NCBI RefSeq assembly: GCF_006345805.1
Contig: NC_043005.1
Location: 24,676,001-24,740,000, forward strand
Origin: Octopus sinensis
Lineage: Eukaryota
Length of the DNA: 64,000 nucleotides
Reading direction: 5' to 3'
In this document: positions 3,321 through 61,175 of the stretch, one piece after another
How the letters are laid out: the number at the start of each line of letters is the position of its first letter
How positions within the stretch are numbered: the first letter of the stretch is position 1
Program-made: the position numbers and the translations under genes
Notes under the pieces: generated by a model
Told to the model about the DNA's origin: nothing
What the model saw: the letters and a program-made list of their open reading frames with translations, nothing else
The model's database searches: none

Positions 3321-3391
<71 letters not shown>

Positions 3392-3443
3392 ATATATATA
3401 AATAGTAATGCAATACGAGAGTATTGCTTTCCAGTAAAGAATA

Positions 3444-4525
<1,082 letters not shown>

Positions 4526-7329: not shown

Positions 7330-8435
7330 TTACCTTGTACTTATTGCAAGTTTTGAAGAGTGCAGTTCGATTTTAACAGTTATTTTTCAAAGTTATAATG
7401 GAAGTGACAAAGGAGCATATTCAGCATATTTTGTTTTATGAGTTCAATAAAGGCAACAACGCAACGGAAAGTGCAACGAATATTGATGCATTATATGGGG
7501 ATTGGACAATAAGCATAAGACAATGTCAATGGTGGTTCCAGAAATTCCAAGCCAGAAAATAAAGCCTTGAAGATGAGCCCATCCGGGAAGATCTGTAGGG
7601 CTTGACGAGGATATCCTGCAAACCCTGGTGGAACAAAATCCTATTGTAACTGTTGAGGAAATAGCAGAGAAGCTTGGATTTGGCCATTCAACCATTCACT
7701 GACACCCGTGTACTATTGGAAAAGTCAGTAAAGTGGGTCAGTGGGTTCCTCACAAACTTTTCAAGTCTAATCACGTGCAGAGAATGAACATGTGCTCTTC
7801 TTTGCTGTCACGTGTCATGAATGAACATTATTTGAACTTAATAGTGGGTAGGGAAAGGAGAAACGCTGGCACCCCAGGCTAAAGAGGGTCTTCACCCATC
7901 TAAGGTGTTGTTATCTATTTGGTGGGATATGAAAGGTTTAGTCCACTACAACTTTTAAACCTGAACCAAATAATAACAAAGAAGATCTTCTGTGAGCTGC
8001 TGAAGCCAGCACTAGAAAAAAATGATCATCTTTGGTTTCAAGATGAATGGTGTTCTTCCATCAGGTTAGTGCTTGGCTACACACAGTGAGGATGACATTC
8101 CAAAGCCTGGAGCAGTTTGAATGGGAGATGATGCCCCACCCATCATATTTGCTGGACATTGCCCCATCTGATTATCATTTATTCTGCAGTCTTCAAAATC
8201 ATTTGGATGGAAAAAATATGAATTCTGTAGACAAGATCAGAACAGGACTGGAGGAGTATTTTTCATGACGGACAATTGAATTTTGGAAGAGGGGCCTTGC
8301 AAATCTACCAGATAGATGGAAGAGCATTGTAGAAAATGAAGGAGAGTATATTTTGGATTAAGAAAGAACTTTGGTTATCTTAATTATGAAAAATAAAAGA
8401 AGTATAAAAAAAACTACTATTGGGATGACCCAATA
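7330..8435 (+). mobile_element. Decayed mariner transposon
   Basis: ATG 7398 MEVTKEHIQHILFYEFNKG; WVPHKL at ~7742; YLLDIAPSDYHLF (YSPDLAPSDY motif); stops and frameshifts; 3' TIR-like tgggatgacccaa+TA; 5' TIR not found. Confidence 0.9.
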
Positions 8436-11699: not shown

Positions 11700-11940
11700 T
11701 ACCCCAGCTTCTGCTCCACAGATGAATTGTCTTCTTCCTCTACTTTTACTTCTGCAACTGCAATGGCCGCTGCTCCCTGGAGCTGACTGACCTCATGTCA
11801 CCTCCACTTATCCAGATCCTTCCACTTTGCTTGTCTCTCCTTTCATTACCGGTATTTTGTTTGTCTACCAAGCCCCAAACTAACCATTATGCTCAGTGCT
11901 CCCTCATTCTCGTAATATTCATCCTCTGGAATTCCCTCCC
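11700..11940 (+). mobile_element. Jockey/I-like LINE reverse-transcriptase C-terminal remnant (continues after 12345)
   Basis: CNGRCSLEL...QTNHYAQ...LWNSLP motif typical of non-LTR RT C-termini. Confidence 0.6.
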
Positions 11941-12335
11941 GACTTACTTGTACTTGTACTTGTGGCGACATTCACCCTGGGCGGGTTGAGTCGGCTTCTT
12001 CTACCACCCTCGAGGGTTGGAAGAAGTTTTGTGGGAATATGTGGATTTCACAAGCGGTCCCCAACAATCCCGCATGTAGAGACATCCTGTTTGCCACAGA
12101 TTGTCCGCAGACGCAGGGACAGAGTGATTGAGGAGCCGCCGGTTGCCGAAACAGACACTCCGAGGATTTTCACCAGAGCCCCGTCTGCCGGGTTGTGGCC
12201 CTAATACCACTCGGTATCAGACCAATCCACCTTGGGTGGCCCTACCAGGAACCGAAGTTCCCGACGGCATAGCTCTGACACTACCCGTTGCCAGCATCCC
12301 CACCACGGTGAGGAGGGGATGGACTTTGTGGACGC
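11941..12335 (-). mobile_element. 395-bp bipartite RTE-derived non-autonomous retroelement
   Basis: 10-bp TSD ATTCCCTCCC (11931-11940, 12336-12345); RTE/BovB-type 5' motif GAGCTATGCC...GTAGGGCCACCCAAG; 3' tandem tail (CAAGTA)3; no meaningful ORF. Confidence 0.8.
12224..12335 (-). ncRNA. Putative HDV-like self-cleaving ribozyme
   Basis: P1 GCGTCC/GGATGC; P2 AGTCCATC/GGTGGATT; P3 CCTCC/GGTGG with L3 TCACCGT; J4/2 CCCAA; P4 contains GGAAC-TTCG-GTTCC; manual fold. Confidence 0.6.
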
Positions 12336-12622
12336 ATTCCCTCCCTGCACTATTATTACTCCATTGATAAATTGTAACTGCTCAAAGAGGGAATGCTAAT
12401 GGCATCAATGTCCCGCAGTCTTAGGTGCCAGTAAAAGACTATGGCACACATTACTTTCCGCCAAATCAAACAAATAAAAAAGAAATTGAAGTAGAGCCTG
12501 TGAATAAAATGTCTGATGCTCTTTGCATGGTTTTCTCTGTGAATATTGAAGCACCATCTGTGGTCAGAAGATGATGATTGCCTGAACTTTCAATTAACTC
12601 ACTTTACTTTCACTTTCTACAG

Positions 12623-21896: not shown

Positions 21897-22749
21897 GTAA
21901 GTCTGCGGAAATTATTTCTATAATTTTCCTCCTTTATAAGCAAATCACAGGAGATGGTGTTTATGGCCATTGCAGGTCAACTCAGATTGGTGAGGTTAAT
22001 ATTGTAGGAAAAATGTTACATCTTCACTATCTTTCTCTGCATCTGAGGTAGCTATCTTTCTCTCTTCATGTCTCTCTTCTAGCGTAAGACGCTTTTTCTC
22101 TTCCTCAATATTTTCCCCCCTAAAGGTGGCAAGTTGGCAGAAACTTTAGCACGCTGGGCGAAATGCTTAGCGGTATTTCATCTGTCTTTATGTTCTGATT
22201 TCAAATTCTGCTGAGGTCGACTTTGCCTTTCGTCCTTTTAGGGTCAATAAATCAAGTACCAGTGAAGAGCTGGGGTCGATGTAATCGATTGGTCCCCTCC
22301 CTCAAAATTCTGCAGAGTATTTGGCATTAGCAAGGGCATGCAGCCATAGGAACCATGCTAAAACAGACGAGTGGAGCTTGGTGCAGTCTTCTGACTTGCC
22401 ACTTCCTGACAAACTGTCCTACCCATGCTAACATTGGAAAAGGATGTTAAGTAATGAGGATGATGATGATGAAGATGAAGATATATGCATATGCATATAT
22501 TTGTGTGTATCTGTGTGTTGTCAACAAACAATCCACTCATATAAAAAAACAGTGTCATTTACTGGTAGTCTAAAATGAGACATCACCTAGCTTAGAAACA
22601 AGTGAGATTTGGGGATGGAGAGTGTATAGTTATCTGTTGAAAATCTGCCTCAATGAATTTTGCCTGACCCATGCAAACATGAGAAAGTAGATGTTAAAAC
22701 AACACTGCTGGTGATGATGGTAATGATGAAAGAGAATGATGATGATGAT

Positions 22750-23268
22750 AATGATACCCTCCATCAGGCAATTGCCATATTCTGAACGCCTTACTTCCCT
22801 GGGCATGGATACACTGAAACTCCGATGTCTGGCAGCTGACTTGGCAGACACCCATAAAATTATTAAGCATCTGACAAACAATAACTCTGAGCACCTTTTC
22901 GAACTCCACCCGTCTAACACCCGTGGGCATATTTACAAAGTCGGAAAACAGCACAGCTCCCATGACTTTAGGAAACATTTTTTCACGTTGAGAGTTGCTG
23001 AAGCATGGAACAAACTGCCGGCATCAGTTGTTAGTTGTCGGAGCACTGCATCCTTCAAAACTTCCATGCTTTCTGAGATTCGCCAACACTACACCTGATT
23101 TTCTCCCCTCCATACACACACAAGCATGTATCTGACTCATACATTGTTCACTTTCCAGACATTTGTACATTACTGCATACACTTTATATGCACTTTCTGA
23201 CAAGTTGTGGTGCACCTGAGCACTGTATACAATAATTTCATTATTATTATTATTTTTATTATTATTCA
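22750..23268 (+). mobile_element. CR1/L2-group LINE 3' end
   Basis: LPYSERLTSLGMDTLKLRCLAADL...TRGH...RKHFFTLRVAEAWNKLP, 3' UTR and (ATT)n tail. Confidence 0.88.
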
Positions 23269-24578
23269 TTTAAATATACTCAGTATAAAATACAAAGTTA
23301 CAGGTGTCACAGGTGAGTATACTGTCATTAAGATAACGTGTTTGTGAGATGAAGGTTCCATTTGATCCGCTCAACAGAACAGCCTGCTCGGGAAATTAAT
23401 ATGCAAGTAGCTGAGCGCTCCACAGACACGTGTACCCTTAATGTAGTTCTTGGGAAGATTCAGCATGACACAGAGTGTGACAAGGCTGACCCTTTGAAAT
23501 ACAGGTACAACGGAAACAGGAAGAAAGAGTGAGAGAAAGTTGTGAACAAGTACAGCAGGGCTCGCCACCACCCACTGCTGGAGCCTCACGGAGCTTTTAG
23601 GTGTTTCCACTCAATAAACATTCACAATGCCTGGTCTGGGAATCAAAACTACAATGACTGCTAGTCTGCTGCCCTAACCACTGGGCCATTGTGCCTCTAC
23701 GTTTGTATATATATAGGTGCAGGAGTGGCTGTGTGGTAAGTAGCTTGCTTACCAACCACATGGTTCCAGGTTCAGTCCCACTGCATGGTACCTTGGGAAA
23801 GTGTCTTCTACGATAGCCTCGGGTTGACCAAAGCCTTGTGAGTTGATTTGGTAGATGGAAACTGAAAGAAGCCAGTCGTATATTGTTGTTTGTTCCTTCT
23901 TGAGCCATGCCTGGCTCATAAGGGCCAGTTTCCTGGTTTCCTTGGCGTATAGGTTCCCCACCTGGACGGGACGCCAGTCCGTCGCAGATGAGCTGCAAGA
24001 TGCAGGTGGAAAGAGTGAGAGAAAGTTGTGGCGAAAGAGTCAGCAGAAGTTTGCCATTACTTTCTGCCGGAGCCACGTGGAGCCTAGGTGTTTCGCTCAT
24101 AAACACACACGTCGCCCGGTCTGAGATTCAAACCCACGATCCCTCAACTGCAAGTCCGCTGCTCTAACCACTAGGCTATGTGCCTCCACAATCGGTCATG
24201 TATATATATATATATATATATAATATATATATATATGGGTGTGTACATGTTGATGTGTGTTTGTTTGTTCTCCTACCACCCCAACTGATGCTAGTGTGTT
24301 TACGTCCCTGTAACTTAGCGGTTCGGCAAAAGAGACCAATAGAATAAGTACTAGGCTCACAAACAATAAGTCCTGGGGTCGGTTTGCTCAACTAAAGGTG
24401 GTGCTCCAGCAGAGCTGCAATCGAATGACTGAAACAAGTAAAAGAATAAACGAATATATATGTGTGCTCGCACACACACATATATGTATATACTCACATG
24501 TATTAATCTGTCTTTCTTTGTGTATGTGCATGTGTTTATCTATGTGTCTTCATTTCTACTTCTGTATTTGATCTCCAG

Positions 24579-25083: not shown

Positions 25084-26340
25084 TGATAATATCTTTGCCT
25101 GATTGGCTCCTGTGCCAGTGACACGTAAAAAGCACCATCTGAACATGATCAATGCCAGGCCCACCTGACTGGCTCCTGTGCTGGTGGCATATAAAAAGCA
25201 CCAGCTGATCGTGGCCGATGCCAGTACCCTTGACTGGCTCTTGTGCCGGTGGCATGTAAAAAGCATCATCTGAACATGATTGATGCCAGGCCTGCCTGAC
25301 TGGCTCCCATGCCAGTGGCATGTAAAAAGCACCAACCAATCGTGGCCAATGCCAGTACTCCTGACTGGCTCCCATGCCAGTGGCATGTAAAAATCACCAA
25401 CCAATCGTGGCCGATGCCAGTACCCCCTGACTGGCTCCCATGCCAGTAGCACGTAAAAATCACCAACCAATCGTGGCCAATGCCAGTACCCCCTGACTGG
25501 CTCCCATGCCAGTGGCACGTAAAAATCACCAACCAATCGTGGCCAATGCCAGTACTCCTGACTGGCTCCCATGCCAGTAGCACGTAAAAATCACCAACCA
25601 ATCGTGGCCGATGCCAGTACCCCCTGACTGGCTCTTGTGCCGGTGGCACGTAAAAAGCACCAACCAATCGTGGCTAGTGTCAGTACCCCTGACTGGCTCC
25701 CATGCCAGTGGCACATAAAAAGCACCAATCAATCGTGGCTGGTGCCAGTACCCCTGACTGGCTCTTGTGCCGGTGGCACGTAAAAAGCACCAACCAATCG
25801 TGGCTGGTGCCAGTACTCCTGACTGGCTCCCATGCCAGTGGCACATAAAAAGCACCAATCAATCATGGCCGATGCCAGTACCCCTGACTGGCTCTTGTGC
25901 CGGTGGCACGTAAAAAGCACCAACCAATCGTGGCTGGTGCCAGTACTCCTGACTGGCTCCCATGCCAGTGGCACATAAAAAGCACCAATCAATCGTGGCT
26001 GATGCCAGTACCCCTGACTGGCTCTTGTGCCGGTGGCACATAAAAAGCACCAACCAATCGTGGCTGATGCCAGTACCCCTGACTGGCTCCCATGCCAGTG
26101 GCACATAAAAAGCACCAACCAGTCGTGGCCAATGTCAGTACCCCTGACTGGCTCTTGTGCCAGTGGCACGTAAAAAGCACCCACTACACTCTCAGAGTGG
26201 TTGGCATTAGGAAGGGAATCCAGCTGTAGAAACATTGCCAGATCAGACTTGAGACTGGTGCAGCCTCCTAGCTTGCCAGACCCCAATCAAACCGTCCAAC
26301 CCATGCCAGCATGGAAAATGGACATTAAACGGCAATGATG
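25084..26340 (+). repeat. 65-66-bp minisatellite (about 16-17 units) expanded inside a repeat ending TTAAACG(ATG)n
   Basis: Unit CCTGACTGGCTCCCATGCCAGTGGCACGTAAAAAGCACCAACCAATCGTGGCCGATGCCAGTACC; other copies of the host repeat (e.g. ~29275-29690, ~30485-30850, ~32325-32720) carry only 2-3 units. Confidence 0.93.
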
Positions 26341-27851: not shown

Positions 27852-29825
27852 GTTTAACCCTTTTGATGCCCACTCACATGAGACCATCCTTGGTTCTTGA
27901 TGCCAACTTCCTTTTTCTTGAAAAAAGTCTTCTATCAAAATTTTATGTTAATTTATGTTTCAAACACCAGTTTGATAATGACTTATTAACTTATTTTACT
28001 AAATTCTTAATTACTTTCAAAATCAGCTGGAATAAAAGTAATATATTTCTGCAGAAATATATTGATAAAAGAGTTAAACTATTTTTTATTGGGAATTTAA
28101 GGATTTTGAAATATTATTTTAATGGGCATTTTAATGTTTGGTTTAATGGATACCGGGTGTGTGCTGAATGAGATTTTAAAAGACATTTAATAGACATTTA
28201 AGATGGTGATAGTGGTGGTGGTTGTCTAGCCCTGATCCAGCAGACGATAATAAAAGGCATTCCAGCCACGATCATCCTGTCTTTTCCCTACATACATAGA
28301 ACCCAACCTGCATTATCCAGCATGACCATTTTAAGATCATAGGGTGTGATTTGAGGGAGATTTAGCTGCTATTTCTAGCAGGTTCAATGTCTACATTGAG
28401 GTTCTCTTGTTGACTCAAGCCATTTAAGCTGCATTTAACTGGTGCTTAATGTGACTAATGTGTTTAATGAGCTTTTAATATGAGATTAATAAATGTTTAA
28501 TGTGTGGTTTAATGGGTGCTTTAAATGATACCAGTCATGCACTGGGATCAGTTAAATCTACCAATCCCTTATATTTAAATATAAGGCCTTATTAATGATG
28601 ATGTCATTAATATTTTTGTTATAAGGTTGGCAAGCTGGCAGAAACGTTAGCATGCTGAGGTTGACTTTGCCTTTCATCCTTTCGGGGTTGATAAATTAAG
28701 TACCAGTTATGTACTGGGGATCAATCTAATCGACTGGTCCCCTTCCCAAAATTTCAGGCCTTGCACCTAGAGTAGAACAAAAAAATAAATTATTGTTTTT
28801 GTTATGGTTATTATCATTATGCTAATGTAACCATTATTGTTATTGAAATTGTCAGTATTGTTGTTGTTGTTATTATTTTTGTTTTTGTTACTGATAGTTA
28901 TCTCTCAGTGTTACTCACAGAAACACAGCCCTCCTGTAATTTTTTGGTACTCATGAAAAAACTTTCTTTTTAGTAGTTTTTAGTCTCATTGTTAGAATGT
29001 TTTTTGTTATTACTATTAAAGCGATCTAAGTTAAAAACCTTCCTTCAAAAGTTTAGGTTAATTTATACTACAAACACCTGCTTAACCCTTTCGGTACCAA
29101 TCTGCCTGAAACCAGCACTGGCTCTGTAGTATAAATATCTTGTTTTCATAAGTTTTATTAAAATCTTGAATTAAAATCTTCCACTAAACATTAGCCACAA
29201 TTTATGTTCCAAACACTAACTTAATGAAAACTTAAGTTATTTTACTAAATTCTTTGTTATATTGAAAACGATCAACATCAATGGAAACTATAGCTGTGAT
29301 AACAGTGCTTGTGGCACGTAAGAGAACCATCTGAATGTGGCCGTTGCCAGCGCCGCCCCGACTGGCCTCCGTGCCGGTGGCACGTAAAAAAAGCACCATC
29401 TGATTGTGGCCGTTGCCAGCCTCGTCTGGCCACGGTGCCGGTGGCACATAAAAAGCACCATCCGATCATGGCTGTTTGCCAGCCTCGTCTGGTACCTGTG
29501 CAGGTGGCACGTAAAAAGCACTCACTACACTCATGGAGTGGTTGGCGTTAGGAAGGGCCTCCAGCTGTAGAAACTGCCAGATCAGACTGGGCCTGGCGCA
29601 GCCTTCTGGTTTCCCAGACCCCAGTTGAACCGTCCAACCCATGCTAGCATGGAAAACGGACGTTAAACGATGATGATGATGATGATGACTTAAAATTAAT
29701 TGAAATAAACACCAAGCATCTCAAAATAAATACAGTAACGAAAGCGTTGAAGTTGTTGTTGTGATTCATTCATAAAGTTGTTATTTTTGTTGTCACTATT
29801 AATATTGTTGTTGTTAATGTTACAG

Positions 29826-31200: not shown

Positions 31201-32900
31201 CTACAACTTCTTTGACAAAGTCATTTTAGACCCCAGTTTGGCTCTGAGTCTTCAAATTTAGAGTCAAAAGCCTTCTAACCATGACCATCTCATCTCTTGT
31301 ATCAGGCCCAGTATATTCTAGAATTACATTATACTAAGTATTCTTCCTTTCTAAAGATAATAAACTGTGGCTTGAAGGAGATTTGGTTGCTGTTTCTAGC
31401 AGGGTGGGCTGCCACATATGGTTCACTTGTTGGTGATGATGATGGTTGTGTATCTGCTGTTATTGGACCCTATCCCAGTCCTGATCCATCAAACCTATGG
31501 ATTAAAAATAATTCACATATAAATATCCTGTCTTTAATTCAGACACTGGCTATCTAGGAATATGTATACTTCAACAAGAAGTATACATGAGATAATGTTA
31601 CCCTAGATTAAAAAAAAAAAAGGGGACCCCCTTCGGTTATGAACAATCATGGATTTGCACCTAGGAAGTTCCCCTCTGATGCACAAGTCTGGACAAGGTT
31701 GTTTATGGAAGACCAGCAGTCACTCATGCATACTAGCCCTCTTCTCCATGCCACTGATGTTATCCAAAAGAAAGGCAAATGGGCCGATACAGTGACGTCC
31801 CAACTCATTTCTACAGCTGAGTGAACTGGAGCAACGTGAAATTAAAATAAAGTGCCTTGCTCAAGAACACAACACCCAGCTTGGTCCAGGAATCAAATTC
31901 ACTTCCTCATGCTTGTGAGCCTGATGCTCTAACCACTGAGCTATGCACCTTCACTACTCTAGATACACTATGGGCATGGCTGTGTGGTTAGGGAGCTTGC
32001 TTCCTAGCTACATGGTTTCGGGTTCAGTCCCACTGCATGGCACTTTGGGTAGGTGTCTTCCACTATAGCCCCGAGCCGACTGAAGCTTTGTGATTGAATT
32101 CGGCAGGCGGAAGTTACTGCCGTGTGTGTATATGTGCGTGTAGGTGCTTGTGCCTCTCCGAAAGAGAGAGAGAGAATGTTTAAAAATAACATTACTAATA
32201 ATAATGATGAGCACCCAGGGAGAGCACACTATTTTGTTTATTTATTAATAAGGAATGCATAACTGGGATGTAGCCAGCCCACTTATTCATTCCTTTCCTT
32301 CTTGGGACACAAAACTCTACTCGTGAAGACCTGTTGAGGCAAGTGAAATCAAAATCGTAATCGATCAACATCAATGGAATTTGTAGCTGTGATACCAGTG
32401 CCGGTGGCACGTAGGAGAACCATCCGAACGTGGCCGTAGCCAGCGCCGCCCTGACTGGCCTCCGTGCCGGTGGCACGTAAAAAGCACCATCCGATCATGG
32501 CCGTTTGCCAGCCTCGTCTGGCACCTGTGCCGGTGGCACATAAAAAGCACCCACTACACTCACGGAGTGGTTGGCGTTCGAAAGGGCATCCAGCTGTAGA
32601 AACACTGCCAGATCAGACTGGGCCTGGTGCAGCCTTCTGGCTTCCCAGACCCCAGTTGAACCGTCCAACCCATGCTAGCATGGAAAGCGGACGTTAAATG
32701 ATGATGATGATGATGATGATTAATACTACTTTGTAATTATTCTTTAGAAATTTTGCATCCAGGACAAAGGTTCCTGTGGCCCCACTTAAGACTGACTTTG
32801 GGCTAAACAACACCTTCAAGAACCATTCTTCTTTTATTCTTTCAATTCCATCTCCACCTTATTTTCTAATGTAATGTTGTTCTATTAACATCTCTATTAG

Positions 32901-33030: not shown

Positions 33031-33454
33031 GTAAGTTATCCATTGGGTTTATTTATCTGTCTTTCACTTACTGATTGGTTACACTGTTACTTATTTCAGT
33101 CATTTCACTGTGGCCATGCTGCAGCATTGCTTTTCAGTCGAACAAATTAATCCCAGGATTTATTCTTTGTAAGCTTAGTACTTACTCTATGGGTCCCTTT
33201 TGCTGAACTGCTAAGTTACAGGGTTGTAAACATACCAACATCAGTTGTCAGGCGATGGTGGGAAGACAAATAAAGACACACTTACACATTACATACATAC
33301 GATGGGCTTCTTTCAGTTTCTGCCTACCAAATCCACTCACAAGGCTTAGGGCAGCCTGAGGCTATATTAGAAGACACCTGCCCAAGGTACCACGCAGTGG
33401 GACTGAACCCAGAACCATGTGGTTAGGAAGCAAGCTTCTTACCACACAGTCACG

Positions 33455-34026
33455 AGTATACATGTGGAGACAGCCAAAAGAAGCATTTGACCCAGACTGC
33501 CTTCTTCCAGCTGTTAAACATGGAGGAGGATCAGTGATAATCTGGGGGTGGGGGCTATATCTTGGAAATCTGTTGGCCCAGTGGTTTCACTTCATAGCAG
33601 AATTAATAGTCAAGACTATTTAAATATTTTATCTGATTAAATTCAATTGTTTCCAGAGGGAAATGCAATCTGTCAGGATGATAATGCCCCAATTCACATC
33701 GCTAAAGTTGTTACTGAATGGCACATTCTAGTGAAGTTGAACATCTTATTTGTCCACCACAGTCCCCAGATCTCATTATTATTGAACATTTATGGTGCAT
33801 TTTAGAAAAGCAAATGAGTCGATATTCTCACCATAATCACTACAAGAACTGGAGACTGTTTTAGCTGAAGAATGGACAAAAATTCCTTTGGAAAAAATTT
33901 AGACTTTGTACAAGTCCATACCTCATAGAATTCAAGCTATAATTACTGCTAAATGTGGCCCTACCCCTTATTAAAATAAATTTGCTTGAAATTTTAAGGT
34001 GTTTCCATTATTTTGTCCAACCCCTG
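33455..34026 (+). mobile_element. Tc1-family transposase 3' half, decayed
   Basis: VKHGGGSVIIWG; QDDNAPIH; PPQSPDL..IEHLW; AIITAKCGPTPY*; TIR-like end ttttgtccaacccctg. Confidence 0.88.
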
Positions 34027-34887: not shown

Positions 34888-37800
34888 AAACGTGAAAACC
34901 AGACTATGTTTTAACTATATTCAACAGATATCATCATCATCATCCAGTGTTTTAAATCTGGGTTTTATCCCTGTTAATGGGAGTGTCCGTATCTACCTTA
35001 ATGCTATAGAAACCGAGGTAGACAGGTGCAGCCCACCCCAAACTTTGGGCCAGCTGGCTGGTGCCCATTCTCCTTTGCTATCATGAGGCTTTTTTGGAGC
35101 TGGATTCTCTATGGGGAGCATGCCCTTGCTTACTCCCAACCTCTGTTCTAGACATGAATTGTCCTGAGATCAAGGCCTCTACCATGATTTTTAAGAAATG
35201 TGGTGGAAAACTAGTTTGGTGTATCAAGAAGTATTGTCTCGAAAGTAATGACAGCCCTTGTATGTGTATGGAGAGAGGGTAAGTGGTATATCCATGATGG
35301 TTAATTGATAAATTGTGATGTCTCTTACTCCCACCCCATCTCTTTCTATTTGTATGTGTATATTTCTGAACCTACATATGTGTGTGTGTGTGTGTGTGTT
35401 TATTTCTTGCACCAAAAAGTACTTTTGCCACAGCAGGCTGAACATCCAATCAGCCATGCTAAATTTGCCAGCATCCAAACAGCTGCACCCTATCATCTCA
35501 TTCTGGGTCCGTAGATATCCTGAAGCATTTGGACCACCCGTACACAGTTCTCCATCCCTCTCTGCCCTGGACCCCAGCATTCATTAATCCTTCAGAGATA
35601 TTCAGGCTGTACCTCAGCCATATTCTTATCACTGATCTGGGAGTGAGTGTGACCCACAAAGGCCCTGGCTACTGTTTGCCTCCTCTCAATAATTCATAAA
35701 CAGAAATATGTAGTGCCCCAGCATGGCCACAGGCCTCTGTCTGGAAGTTGCAAAAGAAGTAAAGAATAACTAGAGCAAGACATATGGCTCTGCTTCTGCC
35801 ATTTCATACTGTTTGAACATAAAACCAGGCTGCTACCCCTTATTTTTACTGATGAGTGGTTTCTAGTTGGACCCAAATCTCCACTCTCCCATCCAGCTGT
35901 AAAAACAACTTCTCTGGAGCCAGTAATAGAGTCAGTTGGTGGTCACTCAACTTGCTAGAAATAACGACCAAGTCTCCCTCAAATCACAACCTAGCAACTT
36001 GAAAAAAGGAAAAAACACTTTGGATGAGATGTAATGGCCATGGGTGGCATGTAAATCCACAAATGCAAATGCACATATATGCAATGCATGCAAATACATG
36101 CACATTTGCATGTACACAAACATGCACTCACTGATATACTTGCAGATGCACAAACATGCAGACATCTACACAGGAGAGCACACACACACACATATACACC
36201 CATAGTTATATGCACATGTACATGCATAGTTATGCACACAGGTGCACACAACACACTCGCATGCACACATATGCACCACATCCACTTTAGATTTCTGTTG
36301 CTCGTGTGGAAACAAATGGAAAACTGCATCTTAAGTATGATTTTGTTATTGGGAACACAGCGTTGGATCCGAGAAAGCCTGTCTAAGAGAAAGAAAGGGA
36401 GAGAGTGAGAAAGAAACAGAGAGAAGAGATACAGAGTAAAAGAAGAGAGAGAAGACAAAGAGAGGGAGAGAGAAAGAAAGAGACAAAAAGCGAGAGAGTG
36501 TGTGTGTATATATATGTATGAGAGAGAGAGACATATAGAATGATAGGCAAATACACACACACAGATAAACATCCTTCTGACAGGTATTTGCGCTGACATT
36601 TGAGTTTCTAGGAATGCTGACAAACTAGTTTAAAATACCATCCTGTTGTTATTACAAGTAATGAGTTACACACACACACACACATAATCTCTTCTTCTCT
36701 TTCTCTTTCTCTCTGTCTTTCGCAAATAGTCAGTTGAACAGTTGTTATGACACGGCTATGATATACTTGACCTATATTTACTATAGCAATTGGTCAAAAT
36801 GCTGTTGAATGTTTCTCCTTTTGTTTATGTGTAGTTGTGGTGCAATATATACCACCCAAAAAGCAGTATACCCTGTGTAGCTGGCCTGATTGTTGACTCA
36901 ACTAAATGAGTTTATCTTCCTGGTTGTTGGCTCAATTGAACTGCTAATTTATATAACTTTTTACACTCACAGGTTGTATACAATGTGTGCGTTGTTTTTC
37001 AGCTGAATCACTTTCCCCATTCGAGAAACACCCAGCTTTCCGTGACCATTCTTGTTGGTTTACTCACCAAATGGCCTGATCCTTTTGGCAGGTGGTGGTA
37101 TTGTATTACACTACAACTTACTGAAGTATAAACACCAATTAAAAGATTGCTTGCTGTAAATCGGTGACATGTCTTACAAGAAAATATTTCAATATTACAC
37201 CCAGAAACAAATTCATGTCTTTTCATTGAAGCCATGATGTTTTTAGATTGCTTATTTATTATGTTGTAAGGAAGCACCTTCTCATGTGACTGAAGTTCAG
37301 GGCCGGTCAGACACTAAAGCACTCTTTACTCTCCCTTTTACTCTTTTACTTGTTTCAGTCATTTGACTGCGGCCATGCTGGAGCACCGCCTTTAGTCGAG
37401 CAAATCGACCCCAGGACTTATTCTTTGTAAGCCCAGTACTTATTCTATCGGTCTCTTTTGCTGAACCGCTAAGTGACAGGGACGTAAACACACCAACATC
37501 GGTTGTCAAACAATGCTAGGGGGACAAACACAGACACACAAACACACACATACATACATATATATATATATATATACATATATACGACAGGCTTCTTTCA
37601 GTTTCCGTCTACCAGATCCACTCACAAGGCATTGGTCGGCCCAGGGCTATAGCAGAAGACACTTGCCCAAGATGTCACGCAGTGGGACTGAACCCGGAAC
37701 CATGTGGTTGGTTAGCAAGTTACTTACCACACAGCCACAGCCACTTTATATTACAAATACACACACACACACACACATGCATACACACACTTTTCTCTGT

Positions 37801-38032
37801 CTGTCTCATATTGTTTATCAGTTTTTTTTTTTTTAACATCTGCTTTTCCATGCTTGCATGGGTTGGACAGAGTCAGATTTTCTACAGCTGGATGCTCTTC
37901 CTGTCACCGACCCTCTTTTGAAGCAAAGTAATAGTTTTTAAAAGCTAAACATGTCTTTCATGGAAGACTGGAAACAAACAAACTCAAACCATTATGTCAT
38001 GCCTAGAAAAGGGTGCGTGCATACACAAATAT

Positions 38033-43475: not shown

Positions 43476-46400
43476 GAAAGGAAGCGGTTGGAATCTCCCC
43501 ATGTCCTGATCGATGATACATCTAGTGATGGTATCACAATAAAAACACTGGTAATTGCGCAACCTGATAATCGCTACCTCATATGAGTGTGTGAATAACG
43601 GTGGTAATGAAACTAAAGCCCTTGATGGTGACAGTGTTACACCCGGCAGGCTCAGAGATGCTGGTCCGACTTCAGCTTGTCGTTATCCAACAATGGACCA
43701 GCGCACATGGCATAGATGGAACAAACAAATCAATGCTGTGGTCATGGTGTGTTACTACCTGAGAAACCCGTAAACGAAAATGGTGTTCATATTAGGGGAT
43801 ACCGATAACGTATGTATGATCAATGGAGAGAAAGGGAATTGTTTCAATACACGGAACAGAGATGGTGTGATCAAGCTAGAGCAGAGCTAGAAGCTATCAA
43901 AAGACGGGTATTAGAAAACAGCAGCAGTGGAAACGATGAAAATACAGATCTTATAAAAGGAAATCTCATAGCAGAAAACAGAGGTGAGATCTCTAATAAA
44001 CCACCGGAAAGGAATAGTGATAACTTTCTCGATGAGAACCATAGAGATTTTCTGGAAGAAGACAATAAAACTAATGGTGACATGACAAAGGGGCAAAAGG
44101 TAATCTACGACAGAATAAAGGTAAGGCTTACAGGTTGATCGGTGGAAATTGAACCAAGAAACGAAAAATGTGAATGAAATTCTGAAATACACCAGAACAA
44201 AAAACATCACAGAAACAAACAATTTGATCAAGGCAGCAAGTATTGTTGTAGCAGAAAATGTGGGTGCTGATGTCAAGAAGTGACAAAAGAAAAGCTCCAT
44301 GATGGAAATAAATAATACAAGGGGTTAGATATGCTCTCGAAAGACATTTCTGTGTTAGACCGAGAAGGGGGAGCTTAAAAGCGAACAAAAATACAGGGCA
44401 CTGAACAGAAAGTATGATATTGAAATAAAGGGCCTGAAAGTGATAATGGAAGAACTGAAACAGCGCCTCGTTGCAAAGAAAGCAAAGATGGTAGGATACG
44501 ACCAAAGAATGAAGGGATACTAGCAGAAGAGGTTATTCAGAGTAGATCAGAATAGATTCTAGAAATAAATAAATGTAGAGTGTACAGATGAAATGTTGAT
44601 ACCAGATAACATTGAAAGTCAAATGTTTTGGAGTGACATCTGGAGCAAAGACAAGGGGCACAAGAAGGACGCTGAATGGTTTCAAGAACTGAAACAAACA
44701 GTAGTCTGTCCAAAACAGGCAGAAATAGTCATTTCAGTTAGGGAAGTGAAGGAAATCAGCAAAAATAATAAATATATAAATAAAATAAAAAAATTAAAGA
44801 GTGGGCAACTAGAAGACCCCGGGACCACGTGGAATTCAAGACTACTGGATCAAAAGATTTGGTGAATGTCATGCACGAATAACTGCACAACTCAACACCT
44901 TGTTAAATGCCGATCAAGTAACACCAGGGTGGTTGACATTGGGTAGGACAGTACTGTGCCTGAAAAGCATAAAAAAAAGGCAATACGGTAGATAATTACA
45001 GGCCGATATTCTGCTTGCCACTTATATGGAAATTATTGACTGGAATATTCGCAGAGTCAATGTACAGATGGAGTCCTGCTACATGAGCAGAAGGGGTGCA
45101 AGCGTAAGTGCAGATGTACCAAGGATCAACTTCTGGTAGACAAAACTGTACTTAGAGACTGCAAACGGAGGAAAACTAACTTAACCATGTCATGGATCGA
45201 TTATAATAAGGCATACGATATGATCCCACATTCTTGGATAATGGAATGTATGAACCTATTTGGTATTACATCGAATGTTGAACGATTGCTTGGAAAAAGT
45301 GTGGTGAAGTGGAGGACGGAATTGACAGCATATGAAAGAAGTTTAGGCTCAATAGAAATCAGGAGGCATCTTCCAAGGGGACTGCCTGGTTCCACTGATA
45401 TTCGTACTGTGCATGATATCACTAACACTGACTTTGAGGAAAGCAAAAGCTGGGTATGTCTTCAAAAGCCGCCAACAAAAAGTCAATCACTTGTTATTCA
45501 TGGATGACCTCATACTTTATGGCAACGATGAAGCCCAAGTCAGTTCCCCCGTTGATACGGTGTATACCTTCAGTGCTGATATCAGAATTGAGTTCGGACT
45601 GAAAAAGTGTGGTGTGTTAGTCTGGAAGAGAGGCAAAATTAAATGTATGAACGGGCTAGCGATACCGTTGTGGGAGGTTACGAAGAGACGGGATATAAGT
45701 ACTTGGGAATATTGGAAATGGATAAACTGATGGAGAAAGAAATGACAGAAAAATTTAAGGTGGAGTACTTGTGAAAACTGAGACTGATCCTTAAGTCGAA
45801 ATTAAATGGACAGAATAAGATTGAAGCTATCAACACCTGAGCGGTTTCACTCCTTAGATAAGGAGCAGGAGTAATCACATTGACAGTAGACGAACTAAAC
45901 AGCTTAGACAGAAAGACAAGGAAGGTGCTGACCAGATATGGGATACTCCTCCCAAAAAGTGACACAGACAGACGGTATGTACCAAGAAGAAGAGGGGAAG
46001 AGGACTTATTGGATGCGAACACTACATTAGAGTAGAAGAAAACAACATAGCATATTATGTAAAAAAAAAATGCCACAGAACCGCTATTATTAGAAGTAAG
46101 AAGGTCAGGCTTGTGTAGGATGAAAGACTGCAAAGATAAAGCACTGTACAAGAAATTTAAAACGAATGAAATTGAAAATAGGTGGGTAAAAAGAATGCAT
46201 GGACAATTTCATAGGGATTTTGAAGATAAGACAGACAGAGAAAAAATATGGCTTTGGAGGACTAAAAGCAATTCAAAACCGGAAACGGAGGATCTAATCT
46301 GTGCTGTGCAAGAGCAAGCATTAAGAACCAGTTACATCAAATACAGTATAGACAACACATCAGAAAGTGATAAGTGCAGAATCTGTGGACAAAATTGTGA

Positions 46401-46756
46401 AACCGTATCGCATATTACCAGTCAATATACGTTACTAGCCCAGAGAGAATATAAGCGACGTCAACATAACAAGGATTGACCGTTGGACGCTTTGCAACAA
46501 AAATGGACTTGGTACTAGTACCAATAATTGTCGGAGCCCTGGGAACAGTGAGTAAAAATCTTGAGAAGTACACGGAACAAATAGGGGCTGCAATAAGGGT
46601 GGAGCCCTTGCAGAAAACAGTACTGCTTGGAACTGCTCGAATAGTCTGGAAGGTGTTCGAAAATTAAGGGGTGTTACTTTAGTTCACTGATAGTGGACAG
46701 CTGACACCGTAGTGCATTTCCAGCGTTAGAAGCTGCGCAAAGACAATATGATAATA
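43476..46756 (+). mobile_element. Near-full-length decayed R4/Dong-clade non-LTR retrotransposon
   Basis: N-terminal WNKQINAVVMVCYY and EQRWCDQAR; RT motifs [29 protein letters not shown] (45497-45508); zinc knuckle CRICGQNCETVSH; C-terminal VPIIVGALG...LLGTARI; many stops; (AAT)n upstream. Confidence 0.9.
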
Positions 46757-48348: not shown

Positions 48349-48484
48349 CCTCCTTCTTCCCTTCTTTCCTGAGCGTCCAATAATACTATATTTGTTCCAC
48401 GTCCTCGCGTTGTTGCGTTTTTTTTTGTGTTTTCTTGTTTGGATTAACTTTATATATATATATATATATAATATAAATAATATA

Positions 48485-48520
<36 letters not shown>

Positions 48521-48699
48521 TGTATGTATGTATGTATGTATGTATGTATGTATGTATGTATGTATGCATGTATGTATGTATGCATGTATGTATGTATGTA
48601 TGTTAAATCAGGTCACTCTTGTTGCTACTAGAAACATGTAATCCTGCACGACCTGTCGCATGCTCGAACCATCGGCGACTAAACCAGCAACCCCGCAAA

Positions 48700-49677: not shown

Positions 49678-49866
49678 TATATTTCGTTGGGGATTTGGTT
49701 TGCAAGATTCTTTATGTGTTTATGTGAGTTCATTAGCTGAAGCATATTCTGTTGTGCCTGGGGAGAGTCATTCTCTTTTGTGCCTTATAATTTAACACAC
49801 TCACCGTAAAATTTCCACTTATTTCTTTTCTCTCTCTCTCTATATATATATACATACATACATACA

Positions 49867-49913
<47 letters not shown>

Positions 49914-49920
49914 TATATAT

Positions 49921-50011
<91 letters not shown>

Positions 50012-54883: not shown

Positions 54884-55305
54884 GAGGGTTGATCAGTAAA
54901 TATCCGGACTGTTACCATAGTGAAGAATCTAAAGCACGAAGAGTGAAACCGTTTGGCACAGATTGACCTTGAACTCTTCTGTGTATGAGCGCTAAGTTTT
55001 AACGTTCTAGCTCACTTCTGCTGTTTACAGCAGTGCTTGGATTCGACAACTACCCCTCACGGCTGCACGCACATCTGTAATGCTTTTCTCAGTTCTGCTG
55101 GTTGAAGGTTTCCCAGAACTTTCGTCAATGTCGACATGTTTTATGCCATCTTGGAAGCGTTTGAACAACTCATAGACTTGTGTGCGACTCCTCTCCATAC
55201 ACTTTCTACAACCTTGCATAGGCTTCTGAGCAGGTATCGCCATAACAACTTTCTTTGTCATGGTCAATGCGACGATCATACTCTACACACCTTGCTTCCA
55301 AGCAT
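54884..55305. mobile_element. Rearranged mariner fragment
   Basis: TIR-like CGAGGGTTGATCAGTAAATATCCGGACTG on +; transposase HTH (RTQVYELFKRFQDG...SGKPSTSRTE) on -. Confidence 0.7.
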
Positions 55306-56526: not shown

Positions 56527-57480
56527 GTTGCGAGCTGGCAGAATCGTTAGCACACCGGGCGAAATGCTTAGCAGTATTTCGTCTGCGTTACGTTGTGAGT
56601 TCAAATTCCGCCGAGGTCGACTTTGCCTTTCATCCTTTCGGGGTCGATAAATTAAGTACCAGTTACGCACTGGGGTCGATGTAATCGACTTAATACCTTT
56701 GTCTGTCCTTGTTTGTCCTCTCTGTGTTTAGCCCCTTGTGGGTAATGAAGAAATAGGTATTTCGTCTGCCGTTACGTTCTGAGTTCAAATTCCACCGAGG
56801 TCGACTTTGCCTTTCATCCTTTCGGAGTTGGTTAAATAAGTACCAGTTACGGACTGGGATCGATGTAATCGACTTAATTCCTTTGTCCGTCCTTGTTTGC
56901 CCCTTCTATGTTTAGACCGCTGTGGGCAATAAATAAATATATATGATATCGTTTGAGCAATTTTTGTCGATGTTGTTATGGCTACATTTTTCAGTATTTC
57001 TTTCCGCTCTTTTGGTTTTGAGTTCAAATCCTGCTGAAGTGAACTTTGCCTTTCATCCTTTCGGGGTTGATAAAATAAATTATCAGTTAAATCATGGGGT
57101 CGACTAACCTTCTCCCTCGAAACTGCTGGCCTTGCTGACGGAATCATCAGAGCATTGGGAAAATGCTTTGCGGTATTTCTTTCGGTTCTTTAGGTTGTGA
57201 GTTCAAATTCCGTCGAGGTCAAGTTTGCCTTTCATCATTTCGGAGTCGATAAAATAATTTTTCTTTCTACTATAGACATAAGGACTGAAATTTTAGATGG
57301 AGGGGGCTAGTCGATTACATCGACCTCCAGGGCTCAACTGTTACTTGTTTCATTGACTTCGAAAGGATGACATACAAAGTCGACCTCGGCAGAATTTGAA
57401 CTTAGAACGTGAAGACGGACGAAATGCTGATAAGCATTTCGTCCGGCGTGCTAACCATTCGGCCAGCTCGCTGCCTTAAG
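56527..57480. mobile_element. Cluster of SINE family C copies incl. a dimeric copy at ~56527-56935 (family also ~4690-5150, ~17540-17720, ~22125-22310, ~28620-28780)
   Basis: Repeated GAGTTCAAATTCCGCCGAGGTCGACTTTGCCTTTCATCC core. Confidence 0.88.
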
Positions 57481-58784: not shown

Positions 58785-59650
<866 letters not shown>

Positions 59651-60142
59651 AAGATTGTATGATGTGATGTGAGATTTAGTTGATATTAATTGCAGGTTGA
59701 GTTACCACGTAGAAGTTAACTGATTGAAGCGTTAATGCTTACGTGCGTGTGTGTGGGAGAGAGAGAGAGAGAGAGAGATAGAGACAGACAGACAGAGAGA
59801 TAGAGAAAGAGTGAGGGTGTTGTGTGCACGCGCGCACACACACAAGCTCAAATGGATAAGTCCTTAATGCGCACATCAATTTTTAGTTCTGTAGTTCAGT
59901 ACAATCCATTATCCGGAAAAGACCACATTCAGAAAAAAGGCCATCCGATTGACTGGCATAAATTCACTCACAGACGCACTCTGACCCCTGGGCCACAGGC
60001 GTGTTGTCTCCTCTCTTTTCCATATCTACTCATACAATAATAAACTTTATTTCTTGGGGCTGCCTGGGTCCATACCCACATCACCCAGGTATTCCTTTTC
60101 TTTTTTAATTGTCTCTCCTCTTACCGTCACCCATGTTATGCT

Positions 60143-60821: not shown

Positions 60822-61175
60822 CATTAATCTCTATATCTAATCGTTCCTTCCCACAACGTCATTCCTCTACTTTTCTCTCCCGCCTGCCTGCCATATCTTT
60901 CTCATCAAGTGTTGACTTGCAAAGGTTCAAGAGGAACATCCACAACATCAACCTCACTGCACGAAAGCACCTCCAAAGGCTATGGGCACCACCGCTTCCT
61001 CCAGACCCAACAAGTAAACAACAACAATAACAACAACAAACGGATGGAAAGAAGCAGAATACAATACGTAGCTACACAATAAGTGGAGATGAGGAAGAAA
61101 ACAACTACAGCGTTAGCTAAGAAAGAATACATCGAAAAGAGTGATTCACATAGAAAGTACATGCACTATGAAATA

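What the first reader, a model, noticed from the sequence alone, without database searches (positions are those of the whole stretch)
11941..12335. Complete 395-bp RTE-derived mini-retroelement whose 5' end is an HDV-like ribozyme fold
Seen: a 10-bp TSD (ATTCCCTCCC) brackets the element. On the minus strand its first base begins helix P1 (GCGTCC/GGATGC), followed by P2 (AGTCCATC/GGTGGATT), P3/L3 (CCTCC-TCACCGT-GGTGG), a P4 containing a C(UUCG)G hairpin, and a J4/2 CCCAA with the putative catalytic C. The 3' end is a (CAAGTA)3 tail and there is no real ORF. Known: RTE-clade LINEs often begin with HDV-like ribozymes, and bipartite 5'+3' RTE derivatives exist (Bov-A type). Inference: a Pol III-independent, ribozyme-capped non-autonomous element mobilised by an RTE. 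The match between the TSD boundary and the P1 start is the key evidence. Deviations: P3 is longer than canonical and the G1-U wobble is absent.
Basis: partly seen in the sequence, partly recalled or inferred. Interest (0 to 1): 0.78.

Follow-up and report, generated by a model that had tools for sequence, protein, structure and literature searches.

The report
Short retroposon with ribozyme-like 5' end
A 395-base retrotransposed element in an unidentified animal genome starts exactly where a plausible but untested hepatitis-delta-type self-cleaving RNA fold would cut, an arrangement already known from other short retroelements, so it is at most a new example.

Summary
An exact 10-bp target-site duplication brackets a 395-bp, GC-rich, non-coding element. 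Its sense strand is the minus strand and it ends in a (CAAGTA)3 tail. Its first 112 nt can be drawn as an HDV-family double pseudoknot whose P1 starts at element base 1.

For the fold:
- It carries the few sequence features the family conserves.
- That descriptor matched 1 of 40,000 anchored shuffles and no other GC-rich site in about 200,000 real-DNA positions.

Against the fold:
- No Rfam HDV-like model matches.
- P3 is 5 layers with a U-U mismatch.
- A rival hairpin (nt 15-41) is predicted to be more stable than P1+P3.
- I chose my criteria after seeing the sequence.
- No second copy was found in the window or in any collection, so covariation and the constancy of the 5' end are untested.

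"RTE-derived" has no support from any tool.

Ribozyme-capped, internally deleted retroposons are already described (R2 SIDEs; NARTc, RIME and SIDER).

Verdict: a real retroposon (about 0.9), with a probable but unproven HDV-like head (about 0.55). It would be a new member of a known kind.

The parts
11931..11940 (.). Target-site duplication, copy next to the element's 3' tail (ATTCCCTCCC)
   Evidence: Exact 10/10 direct repeat, family D1. This 10-mer occurs only twice in the window.
12336..12345 (.). Target-site duplication, copy next to the element's 5' end
   Evidence: It cannot be extended on either side.
11941..12335 (-). 395-bp retroposon body. Sense strand is the minus strand. Non-coding, 56% GC.
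   Evidence: The whole-element fold has z = -2.68. It is single-copy in the window by blastn and nhmmer.
11941..11963 (-). 3' tail: A(CAAGTA)3 followed by AGTC
   Evidence: TRF reports period 6, 3.2 copies, 100% matches at 11945-11963. There is no other (CAAGTA)2 in the window.
11998..12026 (-). 3' stem-loop (element nt 310-338) upstream of the tail. A candidate recognition structure for the partner reverse transcriptase (inference).
   Evidence: Inverted self-match. Hairpin in the MFE and centroid folds.
12330..12335 (-). P1 5' strand, nt 1-6 (GCGUCC). The putative cleavage site lies immediately 5' of nt 1, at window position 12335.
12294..12299 (-). P1 3' strand, nt 37-42 (GGAUGC)
   Evidence: The isolated duplex scores -7.8 kcal/mol.
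12318..12325 (-). P2 5' strand, nt 11-18 (AGUCCAUC), preceded by the 4-nt J1/2 ACAA
12224..12231 (-). P2 3' strand, nt 105-112 (GGUGGAUU)
   Evidence: The isolated duplex scores -8.2 kcal/mol.
12300..12316 (-). P3/L3 hairpin, nt 20-36: CCUCC / UCACCGU / GGUGG. There is a U22-U34 mismatch. L3 is 7 nt, with U at position 1 and G at position 6.
   Evidence: L3 of drz-Agam-2-1 is UCCACGU.
12292..12293 (-). P1.1 3' side, nt 43-44 (UG). It can pair with L3 nt 26-27 (CA, window 12309-12310).
   Evidence: My mapping, used as the level-B criterion. A P1.1 containing a U:A pair is seen in crystal structures (PMC13635239).
12237..12291 (-). J1/4 (GCAA, nt 45-48) plus the P4 domain (nt 49-99). The domain folds as two hairpins, one capped by C(UUCG)G at nt 73-90 (window 12246-12263).
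   Evidence: Constrained and free folds.
12232..12236 (-). J4/2, nt 100-104 (CCCAA). The putative catalytic cytosine is C101 (window 12235), in a C-N-A-A context immediately before P2.
   Evidence: The C-N-A-A context appears in CPEB3 and in drz-Agam-2-1.
12295..12321 (-). Competing extended hairpin, nt 15-41 (CAUCCCCUCC / GGUGGGGAUG). It uses up the P1 3' strand and the P2 5' strand.
   Evidence: Inverted repeat I2. It is part of the MFE fold at every transcript length tested. It scores -15.7 kcal/mol against -10.7 for P1+P3.

Best explanation
This is a short non-autonomous non-LTR retroposon of the SIDE or SINE-like type. Its first ~112 nt encode an HDV-family self-cleaving ribozyme.

Proposed mechanism:
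1. A source copy has no promoter of its own and is transcribed as part of a longer host transcript.
2. The double pseudoknot (P1, P2, P3, P1.1 and a P4 domain) folds.
3. C101 in J4/2, with a Mg2+ ion held at the U25-G30 pair of L3, cleaves immediately 5' of G1. This frees an RNA whose first base is element base 1.
4. A partner LINE of unknown clade recognises the 3' stem-loop and hexanucleotide tail, nicks the target and reverse-transcribes to the very 5' end.
5. The result is a full-length 395-bp copy flanked by a 10-bp duplication.

What is shown: the insertion anatomy (TSD, tail, composition), and the fact that the fold can be drawn with the family's conserved nucleotides, starting at base 1.

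What is inferred: cleavage activity, co-transcription, the identity of the partner, and that this copy is full length.
For: 1. Insertion hallmarks. The TSD is an exact 10 bp found nowhere else in the window. The tail is a perfect hexamer repeat. GC jumps from 0.43 to 0.50-0.60 and back to 0.42 at the two boundaries.

2. Fold. P1 is 6 bp and starts at nt 1. J1/2 is 4 nt. P2 is 8 bp. L3 is 7 nt. P1.1 is 2 bp. C-N-A-A abuts P2. These values lie in the ranges given for the family: P1 of 6-7 bp, a short J1/2 and a P2 of about 7 bp (PMC4908430); P2 of at least 5 bp and a variable P4 (PMC3774820); a U-G pair at the base of P3, plus a catalytic C and two adenines in J4/2 (PMC4836649).

3. Positive control. 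The same descriptor scores the experimentally active mosquito drz-Agam-2-1 construct 17 at the top level. That ribozyme also has a G1-C closing pair. Its single-stranded core letters are close to the candidate's:
- L3: UCCACGU against UCACCGU
- J1/4: UAAC against GCAAC
- J4/2: CUAA against CCAA

4. Rarity.
- Top level was reached by 1 of 40,000 dinucleotide shuffles anchored at nt 1.
- It was reached at 9 of 127,600 anchors in the window. The other 8 were AT-rich or microsatellite.
- It was reached at 0 of 73,182 anchors in three unrelated loci.

5. Precedent for the deviations. An active R2 ribozyme from a jewel wasp has a 4-nt P1, a mismatch in P3 and unusual L3 spacing.

6. Precedent for the mechanism. 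Cleavage at the exact element 5' end is described for the R4, L1Tc and RTE clades. 5'-ribozyme plus 3'-end deletion derivatives are described for R2 and for L1Tc/ingi.
Against: - No Rfam HDV-like family matches (HDV, CPEB3 and the mosquito drz families, as I recall the library's holdings), even at E<=10 on a 131-nt search.
- P3 has 5 layers with a central U-U mismatch instead of 3 clean pairs. My descriptor had to allow this.
- The nested MFE fold contains neither P1 nor P2. It swaps their strands (3-8/106-111 and 12-21/35-46). The nt 15-41 hairpin (-15.7 kcal/mol) beats P1+P3 (-10.7) at every transcript length. The active mosquito construct, by contrast, keeps P1 in its MFE fold.
- I fixed the descriptor's sequence criteria after seeing the candidate, so the shuffle frequencies overstate the significance.
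- Only one copy is available.
Confidence: 0.55

Rival explanations
1. This is an ordinary retroposon copy: the 5'-truncated 3' end of a LINE with a long 3' UTR, or a SINE-like element with an uncharacterised head. The HDV-like drawing at its 5' end is a coincidence, helped by GC richness and by the repeated GUCCA / UGGAU words.
For: - 5' truncation is the commonest outcome of LINE insertion (my own knowledge).
- The bare topology arises in 7.5% of anchored shuffles.
- P1 and P2 share the GUCCA word, so one nested stem pair can be redrawn as a pseudoknot.
- No Rfam match.
- The nearest-neighbour model prefers the non-ribozyme fold.
- My criteria were set post hoc.
Against: - Adding the literature-defined core nucleotides drops the chance rate to 1 in 40,000. 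No GC-rich false positive appeared in about 200,000 real anchors.
- The best anchor is exactly the base next to the TSD.
- The single-stranded core letters resemble those of an active retrotransposon ribozyme.
- No sense frame is open from nt 1, so a coding LINE fragment is unlikely.
Confidence: 0.3
2. The functional 5' structure is the nested fold: the nt 15-41 hairpin closed by 3-8/106-111. It might serve as a protein-binding or stability element of the retroposon RNA. The 5' end would then be set by a transcription start, not by self-cleavage.
For: - The nested fold is the MFE and the centroid (-47.2 kcal/mol) and holds at all transcript lengths.
- The whole element is more structured than its shuffles (z = -2.68).
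Against: - The z-score of nt 1-116 alone is only -1.38.
- No promoter-type head was detected.
- This reading does not explain the L3, P1.1 and J4/2 letters in the right places.
Confidence: 0.1
3. This is not a mobile element at all. The 10-bp repeat is a chance match around a GC-rich patch.
For: About 1.6% of non-low-complexity positions in the window have their 10-mer recurring 150-1000 bp downstream.
Against: - The repeat abuts a perfect microsatellite tail on one side and the composition boundary on both sides.
- The 10-mer is otherwise absent from the window.
Confidence: 0.03

Closest known systems
R2 SIDEs (Short Internally Deleted Elements) of Drosophila (Eickbush & Eickbush 2012, PMC3414825)
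   Same: A 5' HDV-like ribozyme is joined directly to the 3' end that the LINE protein needs. The elements are non-coding, a few hundred bp long and propagated by TPRT using an autonomous partner.
   Different: R2 SIDEs insert site-specifically in rDNA and are demonstrably derived from a known R2. Here the insertion is not in rRNA (no Rfam rRNA match), the parent LINE is unknown, and the tail is a hexanucleotide repeat.
NARTc, RIME and SIDER elements of trypanosomatids (PMC4035085, PMC3383444)
   Same: They are non-autonomous derivatives that keep the HDV-like ribozyme of their LINE (L1Tc/ingi) at the extreme 5' end. Several cleave in vitro.
   Different: Their 77-nt head is also an internal promoter (Pr77). 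They occur in a protist with polycistronic transcription. I did not compare their sequences with this element.
drz-Agam-2-1, an HDV-like ribozyme of Anopheles gambiae (PMC4908430). From my own memory of Ruminski et al. 2011, which I could not open, it is associated with RTE elements.
   Same: It has a G1-C closing pair and cleaves at its own first base. It has a 7-nt L3 of the form U-C-N-N-C-G-U, a 2-bp P1.1, an -AAC before P4 and C-N-A-A before P2. Both reach the top level of my descriptor.
   Different: Agam-2-1 has a 7-bp P1, a clean 3-bp P3, a 12-bp P2, a large structured J1/2 domain and a single long P4. The candidate has a 6-bp P1, a 5-layer mismatched P3, a 4-nt J1/2 and a two-hairpin P4 region.
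Bov-A / Bov-tA type SINEs derived from the RTE-clade LINE BovB (my own knowledge)
   Same: They are short non-autonomous elements that reuse LINE-derived ends.
   Different: As far as I know no ribozyme head has been described for them. A relation to RTE is not shown here.
Mammalian CPEB3 ribozyme (PMC4836649)
   Same: It shares the U-G pair at positions 1 and 6 of L3, and a catalytic C followed by N-A-A in J4/2.
   Different: CPEB3 is intronic and not part of a mobile element. It has a G1-U wobble and a 3-bp P3.

Membership tests
HDV-like (HDV family) self-cleaving ribozyme | Nested double-pseudoknot order: P1 5' - J1/2 - P2 5' - P3 hairpin - P1 3' - P1.1 - P4 - J4/2 - P2 3' | tested here: met
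   All helices can be drawn in this order within nt 1-112. The topology alone also occurs in 7.5% of shuffles.
HDV-like (HDV family) self-cleaving ribozyme | P1 of 6-7 bp, a short J1/2 and a P2 of at least 5 bp (about 7 bp) | tested here: met
   P1 is 6 bp with one G-U, J1/2 is 4 nt and P2 is 8 bp with two G-U. Ranges are taken from PMC4908430 and PMC3774820.
HDV-like (HDV family) self-cleaving ribozyme | G-U wobble as the P1 pair at the cleavage site | tested here: not met
   The pair is G1-C42. The feature is not universal: the active drz-Agam-2-1 also has G1-C, and L1Tc-type ribozymes start with C1.
HDV-like (HDV family) self-cleaving ribozyme | 3-bp P3 closed by a loop L3 of about 7 nt, abutting the P1 3' strand | tested here: inconclusive
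   L3 is 7 nt and P3 abuts P1, but P3 has 5 layers with a U-U mismatch and sits 1 nt from P2. An alternative register gives a 3-bp P3 (C19-C21 with G35-G37), a 5-bp P1 and a 13-nt L3. A P3 mismatch occurs in one active R2 ribozyme.
HDV-like (HDV family) self-cleaving ribozyme | U at L3 position 1 and G at position 6 (the metal-binding U-G pair at the base of P3) | tested here: met
   U25 and G30. The feature is described in PMC4836649.
HDV-like (HDV family) self-cleaving ribozyme | P1.1 mini-helix between L3 positions 2-3 and the two bases after P1 | tested here: met
   C26-G44 and A27-U43. U:A-containing P1.1 helices are seen in crystal structures.
HDV-like (HDV family) self-cleaving ribozyme | Catalytic cytosine in J4/2, followed by two adenines before P2 | tested here: met
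   C101-C102-A103-A104 directly precede P2. This is met at the sequence level only.
HDV-like (HDV family) self-cleaving ribozyme | Match to a curated covariance model of the family | tested here: not met
   No HDV-family hit at gathering score on the whole window, nor at E<=10 on 901 nt or 131 nt. From my own knowledge these models are narrow and do not score pseudoknot pairs.
HDV-like (HDV family) self-cleaving ribozyme | Covariation supporting P1, P2, P3 and P1.1 among homologues | not testable with these tools
   No second copy was found in the window, in the metagenome, viral or prokaryotic collections, in the protein databases or in the paper library.
HDV-like (HDV family) self-cleaving ribozyme | Mg2+-dependent self-cleavage 5' of P1, abolished by mutating the catalytic C | not testable with these tools
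   This needs a bench assay.
Non-LTR retroposon inserted by target-primed reverse transcription | Target-site duplication flanking an element with a 3' simple-repeat or A-rich tail | tested here: met
   Exact 10-bp TSD and a (CAAGTA)3 tail.
RTE-derived non-autonomous element (deletion derivative or Bov-A type) | 5' and/or 3' ends shared with an autonomous RTE-clade LINE | not testable with these tools
   The window holds no RTE and no element with the same tail or ends. The source genome is not in the searchable collections.
RTE-derived non-autonomous element (deletion derivative or Bov-A type) | Residual similarity to RTE coding sequence | tested here: not met
   None of the frames tried has a real homologue: three sense-strand open segments (nt 120-332, 136-285 and 167-361) and one 87-aa antisense frame. 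Weak hits were repeat artefacts.
Classical Pol III SINE | Head derived from tRNA, 7SL, 5S or snRNA with an internal promoter | tested here: not met
   ARAGORN found nothing. Rfam gave no such hit at E<=10.

The most novel reading that the evidence does not exclude
The element is one copy of an amplified family of promoter-less retroposons in this unidentified animal genome. Their head is a variant HDV-type ribozyme with an extended, mismatched P3, a G-C closing pair and a two-hairpin P4. On this reading a self-cleaving RNA serves as a general SINE head outside rDNA and outside trypanosomatids, paired with a LINE that has a hexanucleotide tail.
Probability: 0.2. Interest if true: 0.5.

Novelty: new member of a known kind. 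Interest (0 to 1): 0.33.

Why it matters
If confirmed, this would add an example of a retroelement that solves the "no promoter" problem with a self-cleaving RNA. It would do so in a dispersed setting, not in rDNA and, to judge by the window's transposon content, in an animal rather than a trypanosomatid. It would also extend the sequence space known to be tolerated by the HDV fold: a longer, mismatched P3 and a split P4. The principle itself is established (a ribozyme defines the 5' end, the 3' end recruits a LINE enzyme). The value is therefore as a catalogue entry and a possible new ribozyme variant, not as a new mechanism.

Tried and rejected
1. Rfam covariance models, run on the whole window, on 901 nt and on 131 nt. 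No ribozyme family matched, only noise hits to miRNA and lncRNA models.

2. A second copy in the window, by blastn with word size 7 and by nhmmer --max. None found. A tail-motif search found only the element's own tail. No paralogous empty site was found.

3. Copies elsewhere.
- A 23-specified-base core pattern gave 0 hits in the metagenome, viral and prokaryotic genome collections.
- A 22-mer from the 3' end gave one chance match, with no similarity beyond the 22 bases, and 0 in genomes.
- Exact-ORF look-ups found nothing on record.
- Sequence strings were not in the paper library.

4. A coding origin.
- An 87-aa antisense frame had no homologues.
- Sense frame 2, run against 1.84 billion representatives, gave only hits to repetitive peptides.
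- Sense frames 0 and 1 gave nothing.

5. Organism identification through the LINE reverse transcriptase at 45.0-45.5 kb. The best relatives are 69-82% identical, on ENA metagenome contigs, one labelled jellyfish metagenome. They share no nucleotide similarity with the window and carry no element copy. A string search for the 184-bp repeat in papers found nothing. The organism stays unidentified.

6. A Pol III head. Rejected.

7. Papers I wanted but that are not held: Ruminski 2011 and Webb 2009. The original search descriptor could therefore not be applied. I wrote my own from features given in papers that are held.

Full report
**What is there**

At 11931-11940 and 12336-12345 the window carries the same 10-mer, ATTCCCTCCC. 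The match is exact and cannot be extended on either side. The 10-mer occurs nowhere else in the 64 kb. Between the two copies lie 395 bp with 56% GC, in a window that averages 39%.

Read on the minus strand, the block ends in A(CAAGTA)3AGTC directly against the duplication. Tandem Repeats Finder reports 3.2 perfect hexamer copies. A stem-loop sits about 60-90 nt upstream of that end. Every sense frame has a stop within the first 135 nt, and the longest open stretch is 71 aa.

This is the anatomy of a short, non-coding retroposon inserted by target-primed reverse transcription. The perfect duplication and tail suggest a recent insertion (inference). I put the probability that it is a retroposon at about 0.9.

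**The fold**

- P1: nt 1-6 with 37-42, 6 bp including one G-U.
- P2: nt 11-18 with 105-112, 8 bp including two G-U.
- P3: nt 20-24 with 32-36, closing the 7-nt loop UCACCGU.
- A C(UUCG)G-capped hairpin at nt 73-90.
- CCCAA at nt 100-104.

- The middle layer of P3 is a U-U mismatch.
- A two-pair P1.1 can form between L3 positions 2-3 (C26, A27) and the two bases after P1 (U43, G44).

P1 cannot run into the flank, because base -1 and base 43 are both U. The helix therefore starts exactly at the element's first base.

**Comparison with the family, using features taken from papers rather than memory**

- Most HDV-like ribozymes have a P1 of 6-7 bp, a short J1/2 and a P2 of about 7 bp (PMC4908430).
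- R2 ribozymes have a P1 of 6-7 bp, a P2 of at least 5 bp and a P4 that ranges from absent to extensive. Conservation is rigid only at the catalytic C and four other positions (PMC3774820).
- A U-G pair at the base of P3 (L3 positions 1 and 6) holds the catalytic metal ion. J4/2 carries the catalytic C and two adenines (PMC4836649).
- P1.1 may contain a U:A pair (PMC13635239).

The candidate meets all of these at the sequence level. It lacks the G-U wobble at the cleavage site. So does drz-Agam-2-1, a fast mosquito ribozyme whose sequence I took from a paper's supplement. Its single-stranded core is close to the candidate's:

| Region | drz-Agam-2-1 | Candidate |
|---|---|---|
| L3 | UCCACGU | UCACCGU |
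| J1/4 | UAAC | GCAAC |
| J4/2 | CUAA | CCAA |

**Statistics**

I wrote a descriptor with three levels:
- Level A: topology only.
- Level B: level A plus the L3 U..G pair and a 2-bp P1.1.
- Level C: level B plus C-N-A-A immediately before P2.

The candidate reaches level C. The active drz-Agam-2-1 construct 17 also reaches level C, and I first ran it after the descriptor was fixed.

| Test set | Level A or better | Level B or better | Level C |
|---|---|---|---|
| 40,000 dinucleotide shuffles of nt 1-200, anchored at nt 1 | 7.5% | 0.1% | 1 |
| 127,600 anchors in the window, both strands | 7,433 | 928 | 9 |
| 73,182 anchors in three unrelated loci | 2,151 | 31 | 0 |

The window counts at levels A and B are mostly microsatellite positions. 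Of the nine level-C anchors in the window, eight are AT-rich or microsatellite and the ninth is the candidate. Within ±1 kb of the element, only its first base reaches level B or better.

The caveat is real. The true significance is therefore weaker than 1 in 40,000, perhaps by one or two orders of magnitude.

**Evidence against**

- No Rfam HDV-family model matches, even at E<=10 on 131 nt.
- The P2 5' strand and the P1 3' strand can pair with each other. This extends P3 into a 10-layer hairpin (nt 15-41) worth -15.7 kcal/mol, against -10.7 for P1+P3.
- The P1 5' strand can pair with the P2 3' strand.
- This strand-swapped nested fold is the MFE (-47.2 kcal/mol) at every transcript length tested.
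- In the mosquito control, by contrast, the nested MFE keeps the native P1.
- Nearest-neighbour models do not score pseudoknots or tertiary contacts, so this lowers confidence without being decisive.

**What could not be tested**

There is no second copy in the window. There is none in the metagenome, viral or prokaryotic collections, none in the protein databases and none in the paper library. Three questions therefore remain open: covariation, the constancy of the 5' end, and the identity of the partner LINE.

"RTE-derived" has no support:
- The only reverse-transcriptase fragments found in the window belong to another element at 43.8-46.5 kb.
- No other element shares the tail.
- Microsatellite tails are not specific to the RTE clade (my own knowledge).

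**Known context**

- HDV-like ribozymes at the exact 5' end of non-LTR elements are described for R2, R4, L1Tc, baggins and RTE (PMC3774820; PMC6765202).
- Deletion derivatives that keep only the ribozyme and the 3' end are described as R2 SIDEs (PMC3414825).
- NARTc, RIME and SIDER are the equivalent elements in trypanosomatids (PMC4035085).

This would be a new member, possibly with a variant core.

**Verdict**

- The best explanation is a ribozyme-capped non-autonomous retroposon, at confidence 0.55.
- The main rival is a chance fold on a truncated or ordinary retroposon, at 0.30.
- Interest is modest, because the principle is established and the decisive data are out of reach here. Those data are genome-wide copies and a cleavage assay.

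**A note on method**

One four-letter shorthand from that comparison is in notebook entry 1. I dropped that line and do not use it as evidence. I replaced it with features quoted from papers and with the mosquito ribozyme from a supplement.

Noticed in passing
window 43800-46500 (+): A frameshifted LINE remnant. Reverse-transcriptase domain fragments lie at 45040-45504 and 45356-45727 (Pfam RVT_1), and a cysteine-rich C-terminal piece lies at 46063-46476. The closest proteins are 69-82% identical and sit on ENA metagenome contigs, one labelled jellyfish metagenome. It shares no sequence with the 395-bp element.
   Followed up: partly
window 25098-26181: A 65-bp satellite array: 16.6 copies with 86% matches. 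Shorter related arrays lie near 29326-29517 (period 63). By eye from the ORF translations, there are also related arrays near 15.5, 19.9 and 32.3 kb.
   Followed up: partly
window 56574-56939 and 61170-61545: Two 2-copy arrays of a 184-bp unit. The two consensus units look like reverse complements of each other, so they may be an inverted pair of the same repeat about 4 kb apart. A string search of the paper library found nothing.
   Followed up: partly
window 3343-4525; also 48483-48603, 49841-50011, 58785-58935, 59373-59649: Very large simple repeats, including about 600 copies of AT/TA mixed with TG. These dominate the false positives of any helix-based motif scan in this window.
   Followed up: yes
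window 8047-8265 (+), 55028-55282 (-), 33360-33620 (+), 22730-23095 (+): ORF fragments that look by eye like mariner and Tc1 transposase pieces and like the C-terminus of a LINE protein. None reached E<=0.01 against Pfam, so these labels are unconfirmed.
   Followed up: partly
window 23600-24127 (-), 32011-32241 (-), 33360-33620 (+), 37477-37918 (+), 59122-59667 (+): A recurring SINE-like repeat, seen as the shared peptide ...GTEPGTMWLVSKLLTTQP... in ORF translations. ARAGORN finds no intact tRNA-like gene anywhere in the window.
   Followed up: no
window 12195-12203 and 12236-12244 (inside the element): A 9-nt direct repeat, GTGGCCCTA, 41 nt apart. On the sense strand it reads UAGGGCCAC at nt 93-101 and 134-142. 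The first copy overlaps the end of the P4 domain and J4/2. It may be chance.
   Followed up: no
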